NCBI RefSeq assembly: GCF_031769215.1
Contig: NW_026782152.1
Span: 496,001-560,000 of the forward strand
DNA from: Ylistrum balloti
Taxonomy: Eukaryota
Direction: 5' to 3'
Length of the DNA: 64,000 bases
The translations under genes were made by a program, and so were the position numbers. Of this stretch, positions 43,982-55,900 are shown piece by piece (position 1 is the first letter of the stretch; every line of letters begins with the position of its first letter). The notes under the pieces are model-generated. The model made no database searches. It saw only the letters and a list, made by a program, of their open reading frames with translations, and had not been told where the DNA came from.

Positions 43982-46900
43982 TTATCTGATCTTTGTGGGA
44001 AACTGTTTGTCTACTGCTGGTGAATCAAATCTTCTTTCACTGTAATGATAAAGTGTAATTAACACTATAATTTCATTGGTCTTAAATCAGTGAAAATGAC
44101 TAGTGTGCACTATTATTAGCACACAACTAGGGGATATTGGTAGCTTCAATTGGGGAATCACATATTTCAAGGCCATTTTATTTCTAACAAGCTAAATTAG
44201 CATTCATTTTGAAGCCAAATATACCAACACATTTTCCCTGTGACTGATGTGCAAAAAGGGGTGTGATATGATTTAAGATGAAAAGGAAAATGCTTATCAC
44301 AACACAATCTCTTATGGAAACCTTTTGATACATACTTTGTTACATCCTAAATTGTGAAATCAGGAAAAAGCAACAATTTGTTACTGAACACTCAATATTT
44401 ACCAAAAGAAAACATAATAAATTTCTTGAGAACAGAACCCACCTTATATGGTCATCTGATGTTTTACAGGCTGTCCATTTAAGCTTGTCTTTAGTTGGAA
44501 GTGCAGGATGATAGAAAGCACACTGAGCCTTCTTCATACAGGACATACCAAATCTACAAGGCTAAAATCATGACAACAACTTATAGTCACAATTATACTT
44601 TAGGTATTTGTTCTAAACAAAAAGAATAGAAATCTAACAAACACAATATACATGTTATTGACAACTTCTATCAGTTTCATTACATGACAACATCTTACAA
44701 TTAATTCTATCATTATAAATTTGAAATCAAATAGCATAAGTCTTATGACAAAATTTGTAAATAATAAAATAGTTAAATATACTATATGATGACCAAATGA
44801 TCAAAGGTTTTCATGCCTCAAGAAGAATTACTAGGATGCTGTAATTGATATACTCACTGTTGGATGAGGAAATGGACAGGACATGTTTTTACAGTTAGGA
44901 TAAAATTTACAAGTGACTGCAGATGTAGATGGCATCTTTGGCATGTATGTTGGACGAATTGGAGTGGGACCTGGTGCAGGAATGGCTACTGGAACAACTA
45001 CAACAGAATGGTTACAAATTTTCCATATACTCAAGCAGATATCATGATTAGAGACTGAGGAAAAAACAGAGAGAGAAAGTGGAAAAAATAGAGAGAAAGA
45101 GGAAAAAACAGAGAGAGAAAGAGGAAAAAACAGAGAGAGAAAGAGGAAAAAACAGAGAGAGAAAGAGGAAAAAACAGAGAGAGAAAGAGGAAAAACAGAG
45201 AGAGAAAGAGGAAAAAACAGAGAAAGAGGAAAAAACAGAGAGAGAGAAAGAGGAAAAAACAGAGAGAAAGAGGAAAAAACAGAGAGAGAAAGAGGAAAAA
45301 ACAGAGAGAAAGAGGAAAAAACAGAGAGAGAAAGAGGAAAAAACAGAGAGAGAAAGAGGAAAAAACAGAGAGAAAGAGGAAAAAACAGAGAGAGAAAGAG
45401 GAAAAAACAGAGAGAGAAAGAGGAAAAAAAATAAAAAGAATTCATGGAACATTATATTGAATTTTTAATCTGCTGAAGAGTGATCACGGTTTTTTTTGTC
45501 ATAAAAACAGAAAAGCTTGGGTCTACATATCTATAACTGATTAAGGATAAACAGCTAGCATTATTTTTAACATTTATTTGAAAAGGTTCGCACACACAAA
45601 AAAAGAAGGATTAGCACAAAGTAAAAAGTGTACTTTTATTTTGAAAAAGAAAAAGTCACAAAGAAAATATTTCTTGATACATTGTACTTACTTTTTTGTA
45701 TAACTGTGGTGGCAATGGTACCTCGTTTACTAGCGTGGGTATAAGGACAGTCTTTTCGTGTACACTTTGCATCAAACTTACAATTCGGATGAATAAACAA
45801 ACACCGGTCACCAAATTTGCACTGTGGAAACATTCTGTAAATAAACAAGAATCGTGTTATGATTAATGACACTCTTCATGTGGTAAAGGTATGTCCAATT
45901 ATTCTGTTAAAACTCATTTCTGTCTATGGGCTGAGCACAAAAACAAGTAAGTCCAATAAAACCTGATAACTGTACTTACTTGCAAGGAACAGTAGGATGA
46001 TGATAGGTGCAGGCATTACCATTCACACAGGCTGGCCAGAATCTACATCTCTCTGTCATCTTAGCTTTCTTCAATGGGCTATCTTCAGCATCTTCAACTT
46101 CCATCTCTTCTTCCTCTGTTTAAATCATGCACAGATTATTATAAAAATCAAATCGATATTTACTTGTCAGTAGGGCAGATCTAAAGAATTTAAAATAAAA
46201 TGTATAGAATCATGCATTTCCTGTAAAACATCTATTTACAATCTGAGATACTGACCATCTGTGTCGTGGAGGTTGATAGAAATTGGCCCTATTGCAGGAG
46301 GTCTTGACTCTGGCTTTTTTGTTGCCACAAGGTTCACTTGTGGAGGTGTGACTAGCTTTTGTTTGTAGACGTTTGATAAAATTGGGTTCACACGTTGTAC
46401 GACGTTCACAGACTGTTCTGCCATACCCTGAGTAACCATATCAGACTCCTCATCCAATTTTTCCATCGCTATCTCGTACTTATCATGATCTACACCATCC
46501 AGTGTCACTATAAACTTTGTATTGCTAGCCATTTCTGGTGCAGTTCTACAACAGGCAAAACAAACAGGATTTTTTTTCAAACCACTACCAACTGAATAAA
46601 GATATTTTTGTAAGTTTCTTAGACCACATTCTTAGTACAGCTTTTATACATAGATTTACAGCATTTGATGATAAGAAGTCACTGTCTCTACTGCAACCAC
46701 AATTTTGCTATGTTGGACAAAAACATGATCTACGTCCATTTTTTAACGGATACTAAAAACAATATCTTTTTTTCTACTATATGTAAAGGTTTTATTTGCA
46801 GATTTACAACACAACCCAATTCAGTTCATCTATCTCAAAGCATCAATTTTTTGCAATTAATTCTATACTGAGATACAGGAATCAACTGCTGCTAAATACA

Positions 46901-49900
46901 AACCTCTGTTGTATAAACCTTCTTTTGTCCACTTGGCCCCTATCAACAGGTTCTGTCGTATATTCCACTTCCTCCACTAACAGATCAAGGTCATCGTTAT
47001 CCTCGTCAACAACCTGAGACATGTCTGTATTACCAATGATATTGCCATTTTCTTCTACATTCTGATCTGCAACCACATCTGGATTGCTCTCATACTCCTC
47101 AGCTTCATCCTCTGAAGTTATTCCAACTTTCCCTACAAAGATTTCTTCGTCTGAGTTAGTTAATGTTTCTTCCTTTTCCTCGCTTTCTACTCCAGTCTCC
47201 TCTTGCACAGGTACACATTGGACCCGTCGACTGTCCATCACTGGCGGGACGCGAGCTACTTCTGTAACACACAGTAAAATTACTAATCAGCAAAACTCAT
47301 ACAGAACATATGTTATAAGCTTTGTCTTTTGTGTTAACAACAAACAAAATAAAGTGTTAAGGAAACACTATGCCCCTGGGTGCAACAAAATTTGTTCAGA
47401 CCAAAAATCTGTACTGTGTAACACATGTGCTATTTACATGCACTAGTTGTAAAACACTTACGTCTTCATTGTGGTAATGATTTTTTTTAAACTTTCAAAT
47501 GTATATCAAAATCACATAGTGAAAAATGTTGGAACCACCAGAAAGGTCTTGTCACAAGGAACACACATGCCAAATATAAAAGCCGTATCTCTTATGGTGT
47601 AATAGTTATGGGCAAGGTTAAATTTGACAACACACAGCACAAAAACAATACCCCCTCAATATTTCAATCCGAGGACATAAAGAACCTGAGTAAGAGATGA
47701 TGAGGTCAGTACAGACAATTTGTAGGATCACCATAAACATACATTCTTTTTCATTACACATAACTAATATATAGTGTTCCTTTCCCATCGTCTGGAGGTA
47801 AGTATAAGTAAACTTCACCAGGCGGTTGGATAGGGTTCATATCGCACCAGCTACCAGGAGAGTAGGCAACACATGACAACCACCTGAGTTTTGTGCTTCT
47901 AATCAGATATCTTCTCAAACATACAACATTAATTTTCTTTACCATAGGAAAATTTGATCCCTGAAAAACAGTGCATTGTTCTTCCTATTATTTATTAAAG
48001 TAGCATGTTCCTTTTCCACTGTCTACTGTTAATTAAAAACAAATTAAACCAGACAAGTGTACAGGGTTTATATCGCACCAGCTACCAGGAGAGTAGGCAA
48101 CACATGACAACCACCTGAGTTTTGTGCTTTCTATCCATTATTTTATTGAATCACAAAGATACCTTTGCATATTGCGATGCAAGCAAGAAGTACCCTGTCT
48201 CCCTCTGAGAATCATGTTCATCAAATCATAGTCACTGGACATAATACAAAATAGAATAAGAGATCCCAGAGGTATCTTGGTGCCCACTATAGTATGGTCT
48301 TTATTGGTTCTTTGTATGTACTTTCCATTCAATCCTCTTTATTTCCTACCACTAATACGTTGTATTGACAGGGGTATTTATCTTATAATCAGCCATTTTA
48401 TTTCAGTCTAACAGTTAAAAGTGCAAAACATGGGGAACCAATATATGACATCTGAGAAAAATCCATTCCCTGCTTTTTTTAAGCTATGGAAATAAACTTT
48501 TGTTGTCAAACTCCTTGATGGCAATCTGTTAGCCATTTTGACATCAGATAAGTCCTAAAACTACAAGGGCACAACTAGGGAACAATGGACACCTTCAATT
48601 CTGATGATGGCTGGCTAAAAATCCCTAACATACATTTCTCCTGAATTGAACATTGGAGATTTTGAGATTACTTAAATCCAAGAACATGACAATACTTGAT
48701 ATAAACTTATATGACAGGTGCTGTTGATGAAGGTGCTTACCAATTTAAAGCATTCCTTGTATAATTTTTTTATAAATTTTTTCATTTATATTTTATATTT
48801 CAGATAACTATTACCGTTTCCTTTTCCCCATTCCACTGTTAATTAGCACAGATCTGCATCCATGAATATTTTGAGGTGCAATCCTAACATGTGATAAGAA
48901 TGCAGTATCATTCGCAAACTACCCAACCCTTGTATTACAACCAAAATGAAACAAGTCATTATATCTATAAATTCCTTCACATGAAATGATTAGATACTTA
49001 TAGGCAGGTGTTCCTGTTTCATCATTCAATGATCATTATGAGCAAACTTCACCAACTGAGAACACAGGTTTTATATCGCACCAGCTACCAGGCAAGTAGG
49101 CAACACATGACAACCACCTGAGTTTTGTGCTACTAATCAGATATCTTTTCAAACATAAAACATTAATTTATCAAATCATACAAAATCAATTTTTTATCAT
49201 ATTATCACATTAGAATAATTTGATCCCTCAAAAACAGTATTCATTACTAGTAGAATGTTCCTTTTCCATTGTCCGAAGATAATTATGATCGAACTTAACC
49301 AGACGAGAGCACAGGGTTTATATCGCACCAGCTACCAGGAGAGTAGGCAACACATGACAACCACCTGAGTTTTGTGCTTCTAATCAGATAATATCTTTTC
49401 CAGACATAAAACATTAATTTTTGTTATCATAGGGAAAGTTGATCCCTGAAAAACAGTTAATTGTTCTTCCTGTTATTCATTTAAGAAGCATGTTCCTCTT
49501 CCATTGTCCAATGATAATTAAAATCAAATTAAACCAGACAAGAATGTAGGGTTTATATCGCACCAGCTACCAGGAAAGTAGACAATATGTGACAACTACC
49601 TGAGTTTTGTGCTTCATTCCTGTCAATTTTCATATTGTTTGATACACTTTCCTCTATTAATGGACATGTACAATGAAAAGTAAGACATATATATGTTTGA
49701 AAAATAAAAACTAGTAACATGGAAATTTTGCTCATTCTTCAATGTAAACCCCATTCCAGATTGTCTTTTCATCATGTGTTGAAAATGGAGTTTTATTTGT
49801 TATCTCAGAAAGCTTATCATTATACTTATGACATACTAGTTTTATCAATGTATAAGATGTTTGAAATAACTTATAAATACATGTTCCTTTTCTATCATCT

Positions 49901-52900
49901 GCCAACAATTACAGCCAAACTTAACCAGATGAGGGCATAGGGTTTATATCGCACCAGCTACCAGGCAAGTAGGCAATATCTGACAACCACCTGAGTTTTG
50001 TGCTTTTCACTGTACAAATCATCGACTTCTTTCTTTCTACATTATAACCCTTCATTTCATACATGCAGAAATCTGATAGTGTCATGTCACATCAATTAAC
50101 TTTCCATATAACAACTGTCAATATGTTATTTCTTTATTTTTGCAGGAAAAATAAATTTGCACATTTACTCTCAATCACCTGATCTGAATTTAAAAGCATC
50201 AGCTACTAGGAAAGGAATTGATTATTGTTTTAATCTTTTGCCTTTTCAAAAAATTTGATAATCTTCCTTTCCCAGACCGCAGTGAAATTTGACCAAGTAT
50301 TTTGAGACTTGTCTGCTTCTATCCATCACTATGATCATAAAAACTAGGTCGCTCTTGTTCGGATACAATCTGTTTCCAAACACCAATATTGTGTAATCCC
50401 TTATATGTCTAGACAATACATTATTTCACATCTTACATAGCATGTTTTTGTCTTCTGAATTAAAATTAACCCCAGAGTACTCAGTGCTTTACCATAAAAT
50501 GAGGGCAAAGTATACTGTGTTTCTATCCTTTCATACCCAGTATTCAGAACCTAACAAAATAATTGTTGATGTTTTTTTTCACAATCATTTATTGATAAAG
50601 ACACCTTATTTTCACCCGCCAATAACACAGGATTTCTGTTGCCCAAGCTACCTTTCAAGAAGTTACAATATGAAAACTACCTCAGTTTGTGCATCTTGTC
50701 AATTATCTATCAAATCATACAATATCAATTTTTTTATCATATTATCACATTAGAATAATTTGATCCCTGAAAAATAGTATTCATTACTAGTAGAATGTTC
50801 CTTTTCCATTGTCCGAAGATAATTATGATCAAACATAACCAGACAAGGGCACAGGGTTTATATTGCACCAGCTACCAGGAGAGTAGGCAACACATGACAA
50901 CCACCTGAGTTTTGTGCTTCTAATCAGATTATATCTTTTCAAACATATAACATTGATTGTCGTTATCATAGGAAAATTTGATCCCTGAAAAAAAAGGTAT
51001 CGTTCTTCCTACTTTTCATTTAAATAGAATGTTCCTTTTCCATTGCCCAATGATAATTAAAATCAAATTAAACCAGACAGGAATATTGGGTTTATATCGC
51101 ACCAGCTACCAGGAAAGTAGACAATATGTGACAACCACCTGAGTTTTGTGCTTCATTCATGTCACTTTTCATATTGTTTTATACACTTTCCTCTATTTAT
51201 GTATATGTACAATAAAGGTAAAAATTGTCATTTTTCATCAGTAATTACCAGGTAATGGACACTTATATCTATGTTTTGAAAAGTGATTTTGGGAAATTTG
51301 CTCATTCTTCAATTGGTAATTTTAGGCAGTCTTCAATATACAACAAATGGCCTTTCCAGGGTGTTTTTCTATCAGTGAATATGGTGCCAATCTACATGTG
51401 AGCAGAAAATGCAATACTTGTTTTGTCTGTCAATAAGACAGGATTTCTGTTGTACATTTCAATAAGATATTCTATGAAACTATCTCAGTTTTGTGCAGCT
51501 TATCGATCATCTTATCTAATCATACAATATCAATTTTTTAAATATTTATCATATAAGAATAATTTGATCCCTGGAAACAGTATTCATTACTAGTAGAATG
51601 TTCCTTTTCCATTGTCTGAAGATAATTATGATCAAACATAACCAGACAAGGGCACAGGGTTTATATCGCACCAGCTACCAGGAGAGTAGGCAACACATGA
51701 CAACCACCTGAGTTTTGTGCTTATATTGAATTACCGAATATATTTTCATGTTTATTAAACAGAGTAATTTTTACTAAAACAGATTGCAGTCTATCAAGTA
51801 TTTATTCTTACCTACTACTAGAAAGCTTAATTATGATTCAGATGGAAAATAATTACACGTGTGCATTATGCATGTGTAGAGTATGTAGTAGTTTCAACGT
51901 AATTATAACAACATCAACTTTGTGTAAGACATTTTGAAAAGTTATATATACATATACCAATCGCACTTTGCTAAGGATTTCTTTTCTTTTTGGGCATGTC
52001 ATGAATGAATTTTTTTTATCAGATTTTGTGAGATGGCATTCCAGTAAGCTACCAAAGCAGGTCCCAGCTCTTGCCTGAATGTCACTTGCATAGAGCTGTC
52101 TACACCATTTCCCACAATGCTCAGAGGAATTTAGATTTAGTGAGTGGAATGGCCAATACATTTTTTGAATAATCTCTTGCTGTAGATACTTCTCAGTCAC
52201 TCATTAGTCTCAAACCTTGTAGGCAGTAATAGTAACTCATATGGCTGGTATACCTGGCCTTAACACAGCATCATGCAGACAGTTCCTAACTGAGTTGCTA
52301 GTTGGGTACTAGGAGATTTGAGGTCATTTTATAAAGTCTGAACCTGTGACACCATGCCTGTTTTAGCGAAAGTCAGTCTTTGTGCAGTGCTGTAGCCCTT
52401 TAACATCCTGAATTATGGAATTCTGTTAGTTTAGAAGTAATTACACTAACTCGATAAAACACTTATAAACATTCTAAGTCTGTCCGATAGCCAGCTTAGC
52501 TTTTGAAGGGGTTGTACAGGTGGAAAAGTGTGCACAACCTCCCATTGCTGACTCAACATACCCACACATGATGATGAACAGGTGGAAAAGTGTGCACAAC
52601 CTTCAATAGTTGACTGAACATACCCACACAGGATGATAAACAGGTGGAAAAGTGTGCACAACCTTCTATTGCTGACTGAAAATACCCACACAGGATGATG
52701 TACAGGTGGGAAAGTGTGCACAACCTTCAATAGTTGACTGAACATACCCACACAGGATGGTAAACAGGTGGAAAAGTGTGCACAACCTTCTATTGCTGAC
52801 TGAAAATACCCACACAGGATGATGTACAGGTGGGAAAGTGTGCACAACCTTCTATTGCTGACTCAACATACCCACACATGATGATGAACAGGTGGAAAAG

Positions 52901-55900
52901 TGTGCACAACCTTCAATAGTTGACTGAACATACCCACACAGGATGATAAACAGGTGGAAAAGTGTGCACAACCTTCCATAGCTGACTGAAAATACCCACA
53001 CATGATGATGAACAGGTGGGAAAGTGTGCACAACCTTCTATAGCTGACTGAACATACCCACACAGGATGATGTACAGGTGGGAAAGTGTGCACAACCTCC
53101 CATAGCTGACTCAACATACCCACACATGATGATGAACAGGTGGGAAAGTGTGCACAACCTTCTATAGCTGACTGAACATACCCACACAGGATGATAAACA
53201 GGTGGAAAAGTGTGCACAACCTTCCATAGCTGACTGAAAATACCCACACAGGATGATGTACAGGTGGGAAAGTGTGCACAACCTTCCATAGCTGACTGAA
53301 CATACACACAGAGAATGATTTGGCAGGTACACACATATTCACTTAAAACAGCGTAAAAAGAAAATATAACATCCTTACTATAGATTTCTCATTTCGGAAT
53401 ATAGATGATCCTTTGCAAAAAGTGAGGAGTATGTATTGTATGTACCTTTTCTATCACCTTGTGATATTTGCAAAGAAACTTCACCAGGCAGTAGGAGAGG
53501 GTTTATATTGCACCAGCTACCAGGCGAGTAAGCAATATGTGCCAACCACCTGAGTTTTGTGCTTTTCATTACACAAATTAAAGAATCTTTTTATCTCCTT
53601 TCAACAATCTACACTGTATAAAAAGAAAAACAATTCACTTCAGAAAACCAAATATTTTGTTATCGATATGCAATAATCTTTTTCTACTCTTTACATTTCA
53701 TTTTTTTTTATTTTCAGAGAGAAGATTTTACTTTTTTGTTCACAGTTTAATGATAATCACACTAGCTACAACTTAACAGCACATCATACAGCAGCAATCA
53801 GCCTGTTATGTTCATTTTTCCGTTGATTTTGAAATCAAAGAGTAACTGTTGCTTTTAGTATTGAATGTCTGTTATGTTTTTACCAGCGAACAATGACTGA
53901 GCATTCAAATCCAAGACAACTTAAAATAGAGTTTGTTTTGCTGATCATGCATTTCTTTTCCTTCACTATGTTTAAATATCTGCAAAGATTCTGTGTTTAT
54001 TCAAATCAACAACTTGAAAAAAAACAATCCTTTTCTATTAGCTCAAGATGATAATAACAGTGGGACAGGATTGATATCACACCACCTACCCAGCAAGTAG
54101 ACAAAGCATGACAACCACCTAGGTTTTTGTGTCTTTGGTACTTATTGTCAGATGAATACAGCAAGTTTGTAACAGTTGCTATGGAAGTAGTAATCACCAA
54201 CAGGTTAAATTTTGGTCAGACCACTTAACAGCTACAAACTCTCAATATCAATTAGAACTTAAGTCATCCTAACAAGAAACCAAAAAGCATTAAAAGTATT
54301 ACCTGGTACTTTCTTGACTTTTTCTGTGTCATTTTCAATGGTGTATCTCAGATCTCTGAACATTCTCTTCTCTCTCGATGCCTGAGACACCAGCTGTAAA
54401 TTAGACTTAGGCTTAAATCCACTGCTTAATGTTACTTTCATTGGGCTGACCATGTCCATGTGAGCCTCACTCTGGCGTGGCAATGCCCGAACCCCTACCC
54501 TACTTTTGACTCCTCCAGCCACCTTGGCCACAGGACTTGCCACCTCCCTACTCCTGTGTTTCTGAGGTCCAGTCCTAGATTTGACAGGGATCACTCCTGC
54601 AGTTTTACTTATGTGGGGTACACTGTCTCCAGGCCCACTGTTAGACCGAGATGTCCTTTGGAATGGTTGCACAGTAGCACTCTCTGAAATAGATTTACAA
54701 CAGTAAATCCAGGTAATCCTCTGGTGATAATGCCATCAAAGAATGAAATAAAAAGGCATGAATAAAATATCTATTTAATTTTTCTCAGGTTTTGCCCAAG
54801 CCTGAAAGTTTTGTGTGTGTCTAGAATAGAAATATCTAACAATTCCAGTGAATATCACAGATCTGTGGCTACTCGCCATGTTTAAAGAGCTATGTCAAAT
54901 AAAGCAATGTATACATATTTGGACACTTTACTTTTGCTACATTCTAATTTCCAAGTTGTGTTGAATGAAACAATTGTTTCCATGATGCTGTTGACAGGCT
55001 TTTTGTCCGAGTACCCATCATTAAAAAAAAATCATTTTCAGTGTTTACATTTTGCATAAATCTTTTTATTAATCAATGTAATGAAGACAATCAAGTATGT
55101 TTGTAGAGAGTTACTTATATTCATTTTAGTTTTAATTTGTTTCCCCTGTAATTTGATATTATTCACACAAACGAGACACACCAAGACATTTGAAAAGAAG
55201 CTCATGAAACCTGCATATTTCAAGCAGCTTATATGTTGACAAACGCAGATCTCTAAACTTTTAAGTGTTCTGATGTTGCAGATAGTTCTGTGATCTTGAT
55301 AAGAACAGATTTTAATAATTTTTTTTAATAAAATCAAATATTCACTATAAAATTTTTACCTGTAACATAAAAGTTAAATACCATTTTGGTATCTTTTGAC
55401 GTATACACTAAGAGTGCATAACTGCCTTTCAGCTTATTTGTTAGTATATATGAACGGACTGATTCATATCTTGTCCTCAGATCTAATCTACCATGATTAA
55501 GTACATCAAAACGGTTTGACAACAGGTAAACAAAGTTACTTAATATTCTAACATCCTTATTGCTATGACTTCCATGCTATTTTCATTTAAACTTGAAAAA
55601 AATATGAAAAGAAATTATTTCTTTAGAACCTCTACCTTTCTCACTATATAATTTCCGTTCTTGGAGTATTTCCTGCATTTTGGACGATACAGACTTTTCT
55701 GCTGCACTGACTGCTTTGACTAGAAGGGATTTGTTTGCCTGTAGAGCTGCTGGCACACTGGACCTGTAAACATAAAATATGTATACTTTACTGGTATCAA
55801 ACCAGGATCATATCTATAAAACACTAATGAAGACAACAATCTGCAGTAATAACTAATCTACATTACAATATATCAAGTAGATGAAGTGCATAGTGTGCTA

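What the first reader, a model, noticed from the sequence alone, without database searches (positions are those of the whole stretch)
47833..54133. Intronic array of a conserved, apparently structured 65-nt RNA motif in ZC3H14
Seen: ten copies are exactly 65 nt with no indels, while sequence just past the GTGCT end often diverges abruptly. On the host sense strand the motif folds as GGUU/AACC, an internal loop, helix P2 (G/A)U(G/A)UUG(C/U):GC(G/A)AUAU, a 5-nt CUGGU bulge, helix P3 (C/U)UAC:GUAG and a 7-nt loop U(C/U)(U/G)CCUG. All five variable positions in P2 and P3 swap G-U wobble for Watson-Crick pairs; the 53499 copy has a perfect AUAUUGC:GCAAUAU helix. On the other strand these would be A-C mismatches, which favours the ZC3H14 pre-mRNA strand. 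I found no conserved C/D or H/ACA boxes, tRNA cloverleaf, SECIS core, or hammerhead or twister core. Inference: a multi-copy RNA element of an undescribed class in an RNA-processing gene. Caveats: the changes are one-sided transitions, the copies are not independent, and one copy breaks the outer GGUU/AACC helix.
Basis: partly seen in the sequence, partly recalled or inferred. Interest (0 to 1): 0.85.

Follow-up and report, generated by a model that had tools for sequence, protein, structure and literature searches.

The report
Scallop intronic H/ACA-like snoRNA array
The repeated 65-nt motif is real, but it is the front half of a ~125-nt small RNA gene with the layout of a box H/ACA snoRNA, copied 10 to 41 times in the same intron of the ZC3H14 gene in three scallop genera and kept under strong selection.

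Summary
Ten 65-nt copies without indels lie at the stated places, all in one orientation, with none elsewhere in the window. The window is Ylistrum balloti (scallop) ZC3H14-like, with the gene on the minus strand.

The conserved unit is about 124-126 nt on the host-sense strand, not 65 nt. The same unit fills the orthologous intron of Pecten maximus (41 strong copies) and Argopecten irradians (38 strong copies, about 39 near-complete cores). It was not found in the ZC3H14 loci of an oyster, a mussel and a pearl oyster. Nothing outside the unit is conserved between genera, although four-fold sites of the host exons differ by 38-45%.

The 3' half is a hairpin with real covariation. Unconstrained folds give hairpin, hinge with ANANNA, hairpin, then ACA tail.

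Weak points: there are no RNA data, the pocket lies 11 nt from the H box (canonical 14-16), and no target beats chance. There is no Rfam match.

The scan has noted other multi-copy intronic snoRNA arrays in this genome, but not this family.

The parts
47772..47897 (-). unit 1 (strong copy; core 47833-47897), nearest the downstream exon
   Evidence: CM R1 129 bits; core
48003..48128 (-). unit 2 (strong copy)
   Evidence: CM R1 138 bits
49006..49131 (-). unit 3 (strong copy)
   Evidence: CM R1 129 bits
49253..49378 (-). unit 4 (strong copy)
   Evidence: CM R1 132 bits
49488..49613 (-). unit 5 (strong copy)
   Evidence: CM R1 131 bits
49879..50004 (-). unit 6 (strong copy)
   Evidence: CM R1 140 bits; MFE gives hairpin-hinge-hairpin-tail
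50793..50918 (-). unit 7 (strong copy)
   Evidence: CM R1 138 bits
51027..51152 (-). unit 8 (strong copy)
   Evidence: CM R1 129 bits
51596..51721 (-). unit 9 (strong copy, used as the example). RNA positions: 5' hairpin 1-54 = window 51721-51668; H box 56-61 = 51666-51661; 3' hairpin 64-119 = 51658-51603; ACA 121-123 = 51601-51599
   Evidence: CM R1 141 bits; MFE fold; boxes
53438..53563 (-). unit 10 (strong copy)
   Evidence: CM R1 140 bits; MFE fold, z -1.85
54017..54138 (-). decayed copy next to the upstream exon. ACA lost (GGAUUGU), lower stem and pocket strand mutated, deletion in the 3' hairpin
   Evidence: CM R1 68 bits; sequence
50564..50698 (-). decayed copy
   Evidence: CM R1 33.5 bits; 65% identity to the core
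51478..51500 (-). fragment of a decayed copy (5' end of the unit only)
   Evidence: (D5)
54304..54684 (-). host exon upstream of the array (ZC3H14-like aa 357-483)
   Evidence: tblastn with P0001, 100% identity
46903..47268 (-). host exon downstream of the array (aa 482-603)
   Evidence: tblastn with P0001, 99% identity

Best explanation
Each repeat is a gene for a small RNA of about 124-126 nt, made from the ZC3H14 pre-mRNA (host-sense strand), with the architecture of a box H/ACA snoRNA. In RNA numbering the parts are: lower stem GCAC/GUGC; an internal loop with strands AAAAC and UAGCUG; a middle stem; a small top stem and variable apical loop; a single-stranded hinge with the H box (AUAUAA, AUAUCA or AUAUUA) at 56-61; a long 3' hairpin closed by CCU/AGG; and a tail A-ACA followed by about 3 variable nt. 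Shown: the unit, its sharp ends, its conservation in three genera, covariation of the 3' hairpin, the strand, and the box pattern. Inferred: after splicing the intron is cut or trimmed, and only the stretches packaged by H/ACA proteins (dyskerin/Cbf5, Nop10, Nhp2, Gar1) survive as stable RNAs, so 10-41 copies raise the dose. The invariant loop strands most likely pair with a target RNA. Whether they guide pseudouridylation or act in another way, as snR30/U17 does, is open, because the loop lies closer to the H box than in canonical guides. The family arose or was amplified in the scallop lineage and evolves by birth and death, with intact and decayed copies side by side.
For: Same unit in the orthologous intron, same orientation: Pecten 41 strong copies and Argopecten 38 strong copies, about 39 near-complete cores. 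Sharp conservation limits at both ends in the three-genus comparison. The 15-nt end block is identical in Ylistrum and Pecten and lies exactly 59 nt from the core. Selection: host four-fold sites differ 38-45%, yet 45 of 55 positions of the 5' hairpin are identical in all three consensuses. Interleaved decayed copies score 25-77 bits against 100-162 for strong ones. 3' hairpin covariation: 31 double-change cells vs 18.1+-3.0, 0/500 shuffles; pair 83-115 is CG 27 / UA 18; 86% paired vs 24-56% when slid. Strand: 124 G.U cells on the sense strand vs 42 possible on the antisense. Boxes: ANANNA in the hinge of 84/89 copies (at position 56 in 82), with fixed A's and variable N's; ACA in 87/89, and the next 3 nt vary freely. 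Five of 8 unconstrained MFE folds, from all three genera, give hairpin-hinge-hairpin-tail. Only 2 of 19 variable columns fall in the helices of this 5' hairpin (expected 6.9, P=0.005); both are GC/GU changes and 1.4% of cells are broken. The loop strands are invariant columns. Not a dispersed repeat. Class definition from PMC2780460. Intronic H/ACA clusters are known in Drosophila and rice (PMC2780460; Huang et al. 2004, cited in PMC5932544). The scan's own notes list other multi-copy intronic snoRNA arrays in this genome (unverified).
Against: There are no RNA data at all: no RNA run held the stretch, so a discrete stable product and its ends are inferred from conservation only. The 5' hairpin has no compensatory changes because it hardly varies, and part of its fold (the top stem register) was chosen after seeing the variation. 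The top of the internal loop is 11 nt from the H box, and the small loop of the 3' hairpin is about 7 nt from ACA, whereas functional pseudouridylation pockets lie 14-16 nt away (rule from PMC7601244). The lower stems are short (4 and 3 bp). No target was found: the best rRNA match is at chance level. Fold z-scores for single units range from -3.4 to +1.7. No Rfam H/ACA family matches. ANANNA and ACA are short motifs in AT-rich sequence. Three of 8 MFE folds differ.
Confidence: 0.6

Rival explanations
1. A structured RNA of an undescribed class. The unit is a functional sense-strand RNA or RNA module, but the H/ACA resemblance is coincidental, and it works through other proteins or as a cis-acting part of the ZC3H14 pre-mRNA. 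Examples would be protein-binding platforms that regulate splicing or retention of this intron, or RNAs protected at both ends in the manner of sno-lncRNAs.
For: Selection, strand and 3' hairpin covariation fit any functional sense-strand RNA. The pocket-to-box distances are not canonical (fold against the PMC7601244 rule). No target was found. No Rfam family matches. The host is itself an RNA-binding protein gene.
Against: It would have to explain by chance an ANANNA with fixed A's exactly in the single-stranded hinge, ACA exactly at the conservation limit, two hairpins of the right size and a total length of about 125 nt. The genome seems to carry other intronic H/ACA arrays.
Confidence: 0.2
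2. A tandem repeat or satellite, or a TE-derived sequence, with no function of its own, kept similar by unequal crossing-over and gene conversion.
For: The arrays differ in period (about 235, 383 and 265-520 nt) and copy number between genera, and copies cluster partly by species, which shows array turnover. Sharp ends also occur in mobile elements. Related sequences can exceed shuffles without any structure (the tool's own caveat).
Against: Homogenisation cannot keep only 124 nt of each monomer alike across three genera while the rest of the monomer and the intron are unalignable and four-fold sites differ about 40%. Within Ylistrum some cores are 65/65 identical beside flanks at 54-55% identity. 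Decayed copies persist between intact ones. Depth shows no dispersed copies. Substitutions avoid helices or compensate.
Confidence: 0.07
3. Independent small RNA genes on the opposite (+) strand, antisense to ZC3H14. The upstream blocks would serve as promoter elements (PSE-like and TATA-like) and the invariant TTTT would serve as a Pol III terminator.
For: On the + strand a conserved block lies 59 nt upstream of the core, an AT-rich block at about -35, and TTTT at core positions 57-60 just before the sharp limit.
Against: These blocks are better explained as the complements of the ACA box with the lower stem, the 3' hairpin, and the AAAAC loop strand. G.U pairs favour the sense strand 124 to 42. 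The + strand folds worse than shuffles (z +0.8 to +1.3). The AT-rich block is not conserved between genera.
Confidence: 0.05
4. Self-cleaving ribozyme or retrozyme-like repeat (the scan's other note on this window), or a tRNA-derived SINE head on the minus strand.
For: Tandem monomers of a few hundred nt. CUGAUGA and GAAA strings occur in the Pecten 3' hairpin. There is a loose A-box/B-box resemblance on the minus strand.
Against: No hammerhead, twister, HDV-like or other ribozyme family was found, even at E<=10, in three species. The CUGAUGA string is not conserved in Ylistrum or Argopecten. The A/B box matches are at chance level (P 0.12 and 0.46), and no tRNA was found. The element is not dispersed.
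Confidence: 0.02

Closest known systems
Box H/ACA snoRNAs (pseudouridylation guide class)
   Same: Intronic and on the sense strand. About 125 nt. Hairpin-hinge-hairpin-tail fold. ANANNA in the hinge. ACA at the conserved 3' limit, followed by variable nt. An internal loop in the 5' hairpin with invariant strands. Stems that covary or tolerate only GC/GU changes.
   Different: The internal loop is 11 nt from the H box instead of 14-16. The 3' hairpin has only a 3x3 loop. Lower stems are only 3-4 bp. No target is identified, no Rfam family matches, and binding to H/ACA proteins is untested.
Intronic gene clusters of H/ACA snoRNAs in Drosophila and rice (Huang et al. 2004, cited in PMC5932544; PMC2780460)
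   Same: Several H/ACA genes or isoforms lie inside one intron of a host gene, which needs processing other than simple one-snoRNA-per-intron trimming.
   Different: Here 10 to 41 near-identical copies of one family lie in a single intron of a protein-coding gene, conserved as an array across three genera. From my own knowledge the fly clusters hold only a few copies; I did not read the primary paper.
Mammalian tandem snoRNA arrays SNORD115 and SNORD116 (PMC3413130; PMC4063771)
   Same: Tens of tandem copies of one snoRNA family that evolve by birth and death, with intact and decayed copies.
   Different: Those are box C/D and imprinted, and each copy lies in its own intron of a non-coding host transcript (my own knowledge). 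Here the layout is H/ACA-like, and all copies lie in one annotated intron of a protein-coding gene.
snR30/U17 (SNORA73), an H/ACA snoRNA that does not guide pseudouridylation (PMC7601244)
   Same: An H/ACA-class RNA whose strongly conserved internal-loop strands could pair with a target without modifying it. The core holds strings that resemble m1 and m2.
   Different: m1 (AUAUUCCUA) and m2 (AAACCAU) are not matched: there is an inserted G and a mismatch, and the majority Ylistrum copies differ further. They would lie in the wrong hairpin. U17 is over 200 nt. Rfam SNORA73 gives no hit. The unit is not a member.

Membership tests
Box H/ACA snoRNA class | [quoted passage not shown] | tested here: met
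   5 of 8 unconstrained MFE folds, from three genera, give it. 91% of cells are paired in 58 sequences vs 28-56% when slid. The 3' hairpin covaries. The 5' hairpin is supported only by the placement of substitutions.
Box H/ACA snoRNA class | H box ANANNA in the single-stranded hinge | tested here: met
   Present in the hinge of 84 of 89 strong copies (at RNA position 56 in 82), with A's fixed and N positions variable. It is single-stranded in the folds.
Box H/ACA snoRNA class | ACA box 3 nt before the mature 3' end | tested here: inconclusive
   ACA is present in 87 of 89 copies, and conservation stops right after it, with the next 3 nt varying freely. The mature 3' end itself is unknown because there are no RNA data.
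Box H/ACA snoRNA class | Stable RNA bound by dyskerin/Cbf5, Nop10, Nhp2 and Gar1 | not testable with these tools
   No RNA run holds the stretch, and no protein-binding data are available.
Pseudouridylation guide (functional subset of H/ACA) | Top of the pocket 14-16 nt from the H or ACA box (PMC7601244) | tested here: not met
   In the predicted fold the distance is 11 nt for the 5' hairpin loop and about 7 nt for the 3' hairpin loop. This depends on a predicted fold, not a probed one.
Pseudouridylation guide (functional subset of H/ACA) | Bipartite complementarity to a uridine-containing site in rRNA or snRNA | tested here: inconclusive
   The best site is a conserved 18S position with 10-11 bp in 12 non-scallop rDNA loci, and 6+3 bp in the form I take (from memory) to be typical of animals. 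Random guides do as well in 10-13% of trials. Scallop rRNA and snRNAs were not available.
snR30/U17 (SNORA73) | m1 AUAUUCCUA and m2 AAACCAU in the internal loop of the 3' hairpin; length over 200 nt (PMC7601244) | tested here: not met
   Only approximate strings occur, in the 5' half. The unit is about 126 nt. There is no Rfam hit.
Box C/D snoRNA | Conserved C (RUGAUGA) and D (CUGA) boxes near the ends with a terminal stem | tested here: not met
   UGAUGA-like strings in the spacer are not conserved among copies or genera. Rfam C/D hits have E values above 1 and are not systematic.
Self-cleaving ribozymes or retrozymes | Conserved catalytic core (hammerhead, twister and others) | tested here: not met
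   No such Rfam family was found at E<=10 in three species.
SINE or other dispersed TE | Many dispersed genomic copies; for tRNA-derived SINEs also Pol III A and B boxes | tested here: not met
   Contig depth at the cores is about 1-6x the single-copy level, against about 8000 for a true repeat in the same stretch. A/B box matches are at chance level. No tRNA was found.

The most novel reading that the evidence does not exclude
A scallop-specific, dosage-amplified H/ACA-like RNA that does not guide pseudouridylation. Its almost invariant 5' hairpin, with a loop too close to the H box for catalysis, would bind another RNA or protein. With 10-41 copies in one intron it could also yield RNAs capped by snoRNPs at both ends (sno-lncRNA-like), or could couple the output of the RNA to expression of the poly(A)-binding protein gene that hosts it.
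Probability: 0.2. Interest if true: 0.7.

Novelty: new variant of a known kind. Interest (0 to 1): 0.5.

Why it matters
If the RNAs are made, this is one of the largest tandem arrays of an H/ACA-type RNA in a single intron of an animal protein-coding gene, and it has been maintained across scallop genera whose silent sites are near saturation. It would give a natural system for two questions. First, how are many snoRNPs released from one intron, which is a processing problem in animals, where one snoRNA per intron is the rule? Second, why is the dose of one particular small RNA pushed so high in one lineage? The non-canonical pocket geometry and the missing target make it a candidate orphan H/ACA RNA with a function other than rRNA modification. 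For annotation, it shows that a striking conserved core can be half of an ordinary gene when the second half evolves by compensatory change.

Tried and rejected
- Rfam at gathering score on the whole window, and at E<=10 on the array and on the Pecten and Argopecten units: no family.
- tRNA scan: none.
- Exact-pattern scans of metagenome, viral and prokaryote collections: 0 hits.
- Protein-database search with an ORF that runs through a core, hoping to catch motif-bearing contigs: nothing.
- Paper search for the motif strings: nothing.
- SINE central domains (MetaSINE and others) were considered. I dropped the idea after the depth test showed no dispersed copies; I did not compare consensus sequences.
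- Coding or alternative-exon reading: one minus-strand frame is open through most cores. However, the substitutions are non-synonymous, one copy has a stop, there is no polypyrimidine tract before the AG, and there is no conserved GT. Rejected.
- miRNA hairpin: stems are too short and interrupted, and z-scores are about 0. Rejected.
- Minus-strand Pol III gene or SINE head: box matches are at chance level and T runs are inconsistent. Rejected.
- Plus-strand snRNA-type gene: rejected on strand evidence.
- U17/snR30 homology: rejected after checking the motifs in PMC7601244.
- rRNA target prediction: not significant. The primer string used to fetch rDNA came from my memory. The loci were not verified with Rfam, but they share the expected conserved 18S site.
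- RNAalifold on the MAFFT alignment missed the 3' hairpin because of loop gaps, so I wrote the structure by hand.
- Mizuhopecten locus: not on record.
- Search for exon fragments from further scallops: nothing.


Full report
OBSERVATION. The stretch 47.8-54.1 kb holds ten copies of a 65-nt block without indels, at 47833, 48064, 49067, 49314, 49549, 49940, 50854, 51088, 51657 and 53499 on the + strand. There are also two decayed copies and a fragment. Sub-patterns of the block are expected 0.00-0.01 times per window by chance and occur 10-11 times, all in one orientation and nowhere else in the 64 kb. Pairwise identity averages 93% in the block, 71% in the 65 nt upstream on the + strand, and about 57% elsewhere. 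Some pairs are identical at 65 of 65 positions beside flanks at 54-55% identity.

WHERE IT IS. A protein annotated as ZC3H14-like from the scallop Ylistrum balloti (P0001, XP_060070875.1) maps to the window at 97-100% identity over 13 exons on the minus strand. The window is therefore that species or a very close relative (Pectinidae). The array lies in the 7-kb intron between exons 54304-54684 and 46903-47268. Contigs of four public DNA runs laid on 47.7-52.4 kb at 80% likeness show no excess at the cores: summed depth is 15-95, against about 15 for single-copy sequence. This fits the local copies collapsing into shared unitigs. An unrelated repeat at 48171-48327 reaches about 8000. The tool warns that contig depth is a poor measure, but a difference of this size rules out a high-copy dispersed element.

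On the ten to twelve copies of the window, the proposed P1/P2/P3 fold is 93.9% paired. Shuffling the partners gives 93.8% (363 of 500 shuffles do as well), and no pair changes on both sides. RNAalifold prefers a different and weak fold. Single copies fold no better than shuffled sequence, with z from 0 to -1.1. Within the window, then, the fold is compatible with the data but not supported by them.

COMPARATIVE DATA CHANGE THE PICTURE. I fetched the orthologous gene of Pecten maximus (L001) and of Argopecten irradians (L005). In both, the same intron, between the exons for residues around 484/485 and 474/475, is filled with the motif. Pecten has 41 strong copies at a period of about 383 nt. 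Argopecten has 38 strong copies (about 39 near-complete cores) in a higher-order repeat of about 1115 nt. All are in the same orientation relative to the host as in the window. A profile search and a covariance model found nothing in the ZC3H14 loci of an oyster (Saccostrea), a mussel (Mytilus californianus) and a pearl oyster (Pinctada; its gene model is partial).

Aligning the consensus units of the three genera shows that conservation has two sharp limits. In host-sense orientation it starts at (A)AGCAC and ends at AGGAACA, 124 nt later. Nothing outside is alike between genera. The weaker upstream block seen on the + strand of the window is the far end of this unit. Its last 15 nt are identical in Ylistrum and Pecten and lie exactly 59 nt from the core, with no indel.

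As a neutral yardstick, four-fold degenerate sites of four host exons differ by 38-45% between the genera. In contrast, 45 of the 55 positions of the unit's first hairpin are identical in all three consensuses. Decayed copies (25-77 bits against 100-162 bits for strong copies) sit between intact ones. The decayed copy at 54017-54138 has lost the terminal ACA, carries mutations in stem and loop, and has a deletion. This is purifying selection on a 124-nt unit within arrays that otherwise turn over.

STRUCTURE OF THE WHOLE UNIT. On 58 distinct units (alignment A3), the 3' half forms a long hairpin with real covariation. There are 31 cells changed on both sides against 18.1 +- 3.0 in shuffles (0 of 500 reach it). 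Pair 83-115 is C-G in 27 sequences and U-A in 18. The hairpin is 86% paired against 24-56% when the partners are slid. The tool warns that related sequences can beat shuffles without structure. The slid controls and the C-G/U-A split argue that the signal is real, but the number of independent events is small.

The hairpin has 124 G.U cells on the host-sense strand, against 42 cells that would be G.U on the other strand.

The core itself varies too little for covariation under any fold, but the placement of its substitutions is informative. The alternative hairpin has lower stem GCAC/GUGC, an internal loop of AAAAC opposite UAGCUG, a middle stem, a small internal loop, a 3-bp top stem and an apical loop. 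In that fold only 2 of 19 variable columns are paired (6.9 expected, P = 0.005). Both are G-C/G-U changes, and 1.4% of cells are broken. One caveat: the lower and middle stems came from RNAalifold and MFE predictions, but I chose the top-stem register after seeing the variation.

WHAT IT LOOKS LIKE. Unconstrained folding of eight single units gave the same architecture in five cases, covering all three genera. It consists of a 5' hairpin with the internal loop, a single-stranded hinge, a 3' hairpin closed by CCU/AGG, and a single-stranded tail. The hinge carries ANANNA in 84 of 89 strong copies, at RNA position 56 in 82 of them. The three A's are fixed, and the second, fourth and fifth letters vary. 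The tail carries ACA in 87 of 89 copies, and the three letters after ACA vary freely, so conservation ends exactly there.

This is the published definition of a box H/ACA snoRNA: hairpin-hinge-hairpin-tail, H box ANANNA in the hinge, and ACA 3 nt from the 3' end (PMC2780460). The two strands of the internal loop are among the invariant columns of the alignment, as guide strands would be.

WHAT DOES NOT FIT. First, no RNA run held the stretch, so there is no evidence for a stable product. Second, in functional guides the top of the pocket lies 14-16 nt from the H or ACA box (PMC7601244). In the predicted fold it is 11 nt for the 5' hairpin, and the 3' hairpin has only a 3x3 loop about 7 nt from ACA. 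Third, the target is unknown. I fetched 120 eukaryotic rDNA loci from metagenomes, using a primer site recalled from memory, and scanned them for bipartite complementarity. The best site recurs at one conserved 18S position, with 10-11 contiguous pairs in 12 unrelated loci. However, random guides do as well in 10-13% of trials, and the form I take (from memory) to be typical of animals gives only 6+3 pairs. Scallop rRNA was not available. Fourth, no Rfam family matches. A resemblance to the m1/m2 motifs of snR30/U17 did not survive a check against the published motifs.

ALTERNATIVES. I tested or weighed each of the following and found it wanting: a coding or alternative-exon reading, a miRNA hairpin, a minus-strand Pol III gene or SINE head, a plus-strand snRNA-type gene, a self-cleaving repeat (the scan's other note on this window, s1-240815), and a functionless satellite. 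The reasons are given under the rivals and under what was tried. What remains open is whether the unit is a true H/ACA RNP or a different functional sense-strand RNA that happens to look like one.

CONTEXT AND NOVELTY. Clusters of H/ACA genes inside one intron are known from Drosophila and rice (PMC2780460; Huang et al. 2004, as cited in PMC5932544). The scan's own unverified notes list other arrays of three to six snoRNA copies in introns of this genome. The kind is therefore known. What is new is the family itself (no Rfam match), its size (10, 38 and 41 strong copies in one intron of a protein-coding gene in three genera), and its non-canonical loop geometry.

VERDICT. I rate the H/ACA-class reading at about 0.6 and any functional sense-strand RNA at about 0.8. 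I rate the interest as moderate.

Noticed in passing
window 52392-53435: About 15-17 tandem copies of a 62-nt minisatellite lie inside the same intron, between two units. It is unrelated in sequence to the unit (family D1).
   Followed up: no
window 48171-48327 and 48485-48641: Fragments of a very high-copy dispersed repeat (summed contig depth about 8000 and 230, against about 15 baseline, with dozens of different loose ends) sit in the 1-kb gap between units 2 and 3. This is probably a TE inserted into the array.
   Followed up: partly
window 44831-45468: A long CT/GA-rich low-complexity stretch gives 130-200-aa ORFs on both strands, between the CCCH zinc-finger exons of the host gene.
   Followed up: no
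L001 13.7-29.3 kb (Pecten maximus) and L005 15.0-30.3 kb (Argopecten irradians): The arrays are organised differently. Pecten has a ~383-nt monomer that in several places also holds a decayed second unit. Argopecten has a ~1115-nt higher-order repeat of three unit subtypes, with spacings of about 265, 352 and 495-520 nt.
   Followed up: partly
rDNA loci L008-L127, about 1610-1730 nt upstream of the 18S 3' end: The loop strands of the unit are complementary to one conserved 18S site in many unrelated eukaryotes (10-11 bp). The match is not better than random guides achieve in 10-13% of trials.
   Followed up: yes
L002 31755-32292 (Saccostrea echinata ZC3H14 locus): The oyster orthologue spans 50 kb and shows a pair of weak, identical hits 497 nt apart. 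This hints at some other tandem repeat in its introns, unrelated to the scallop unit.
   Followed up: no
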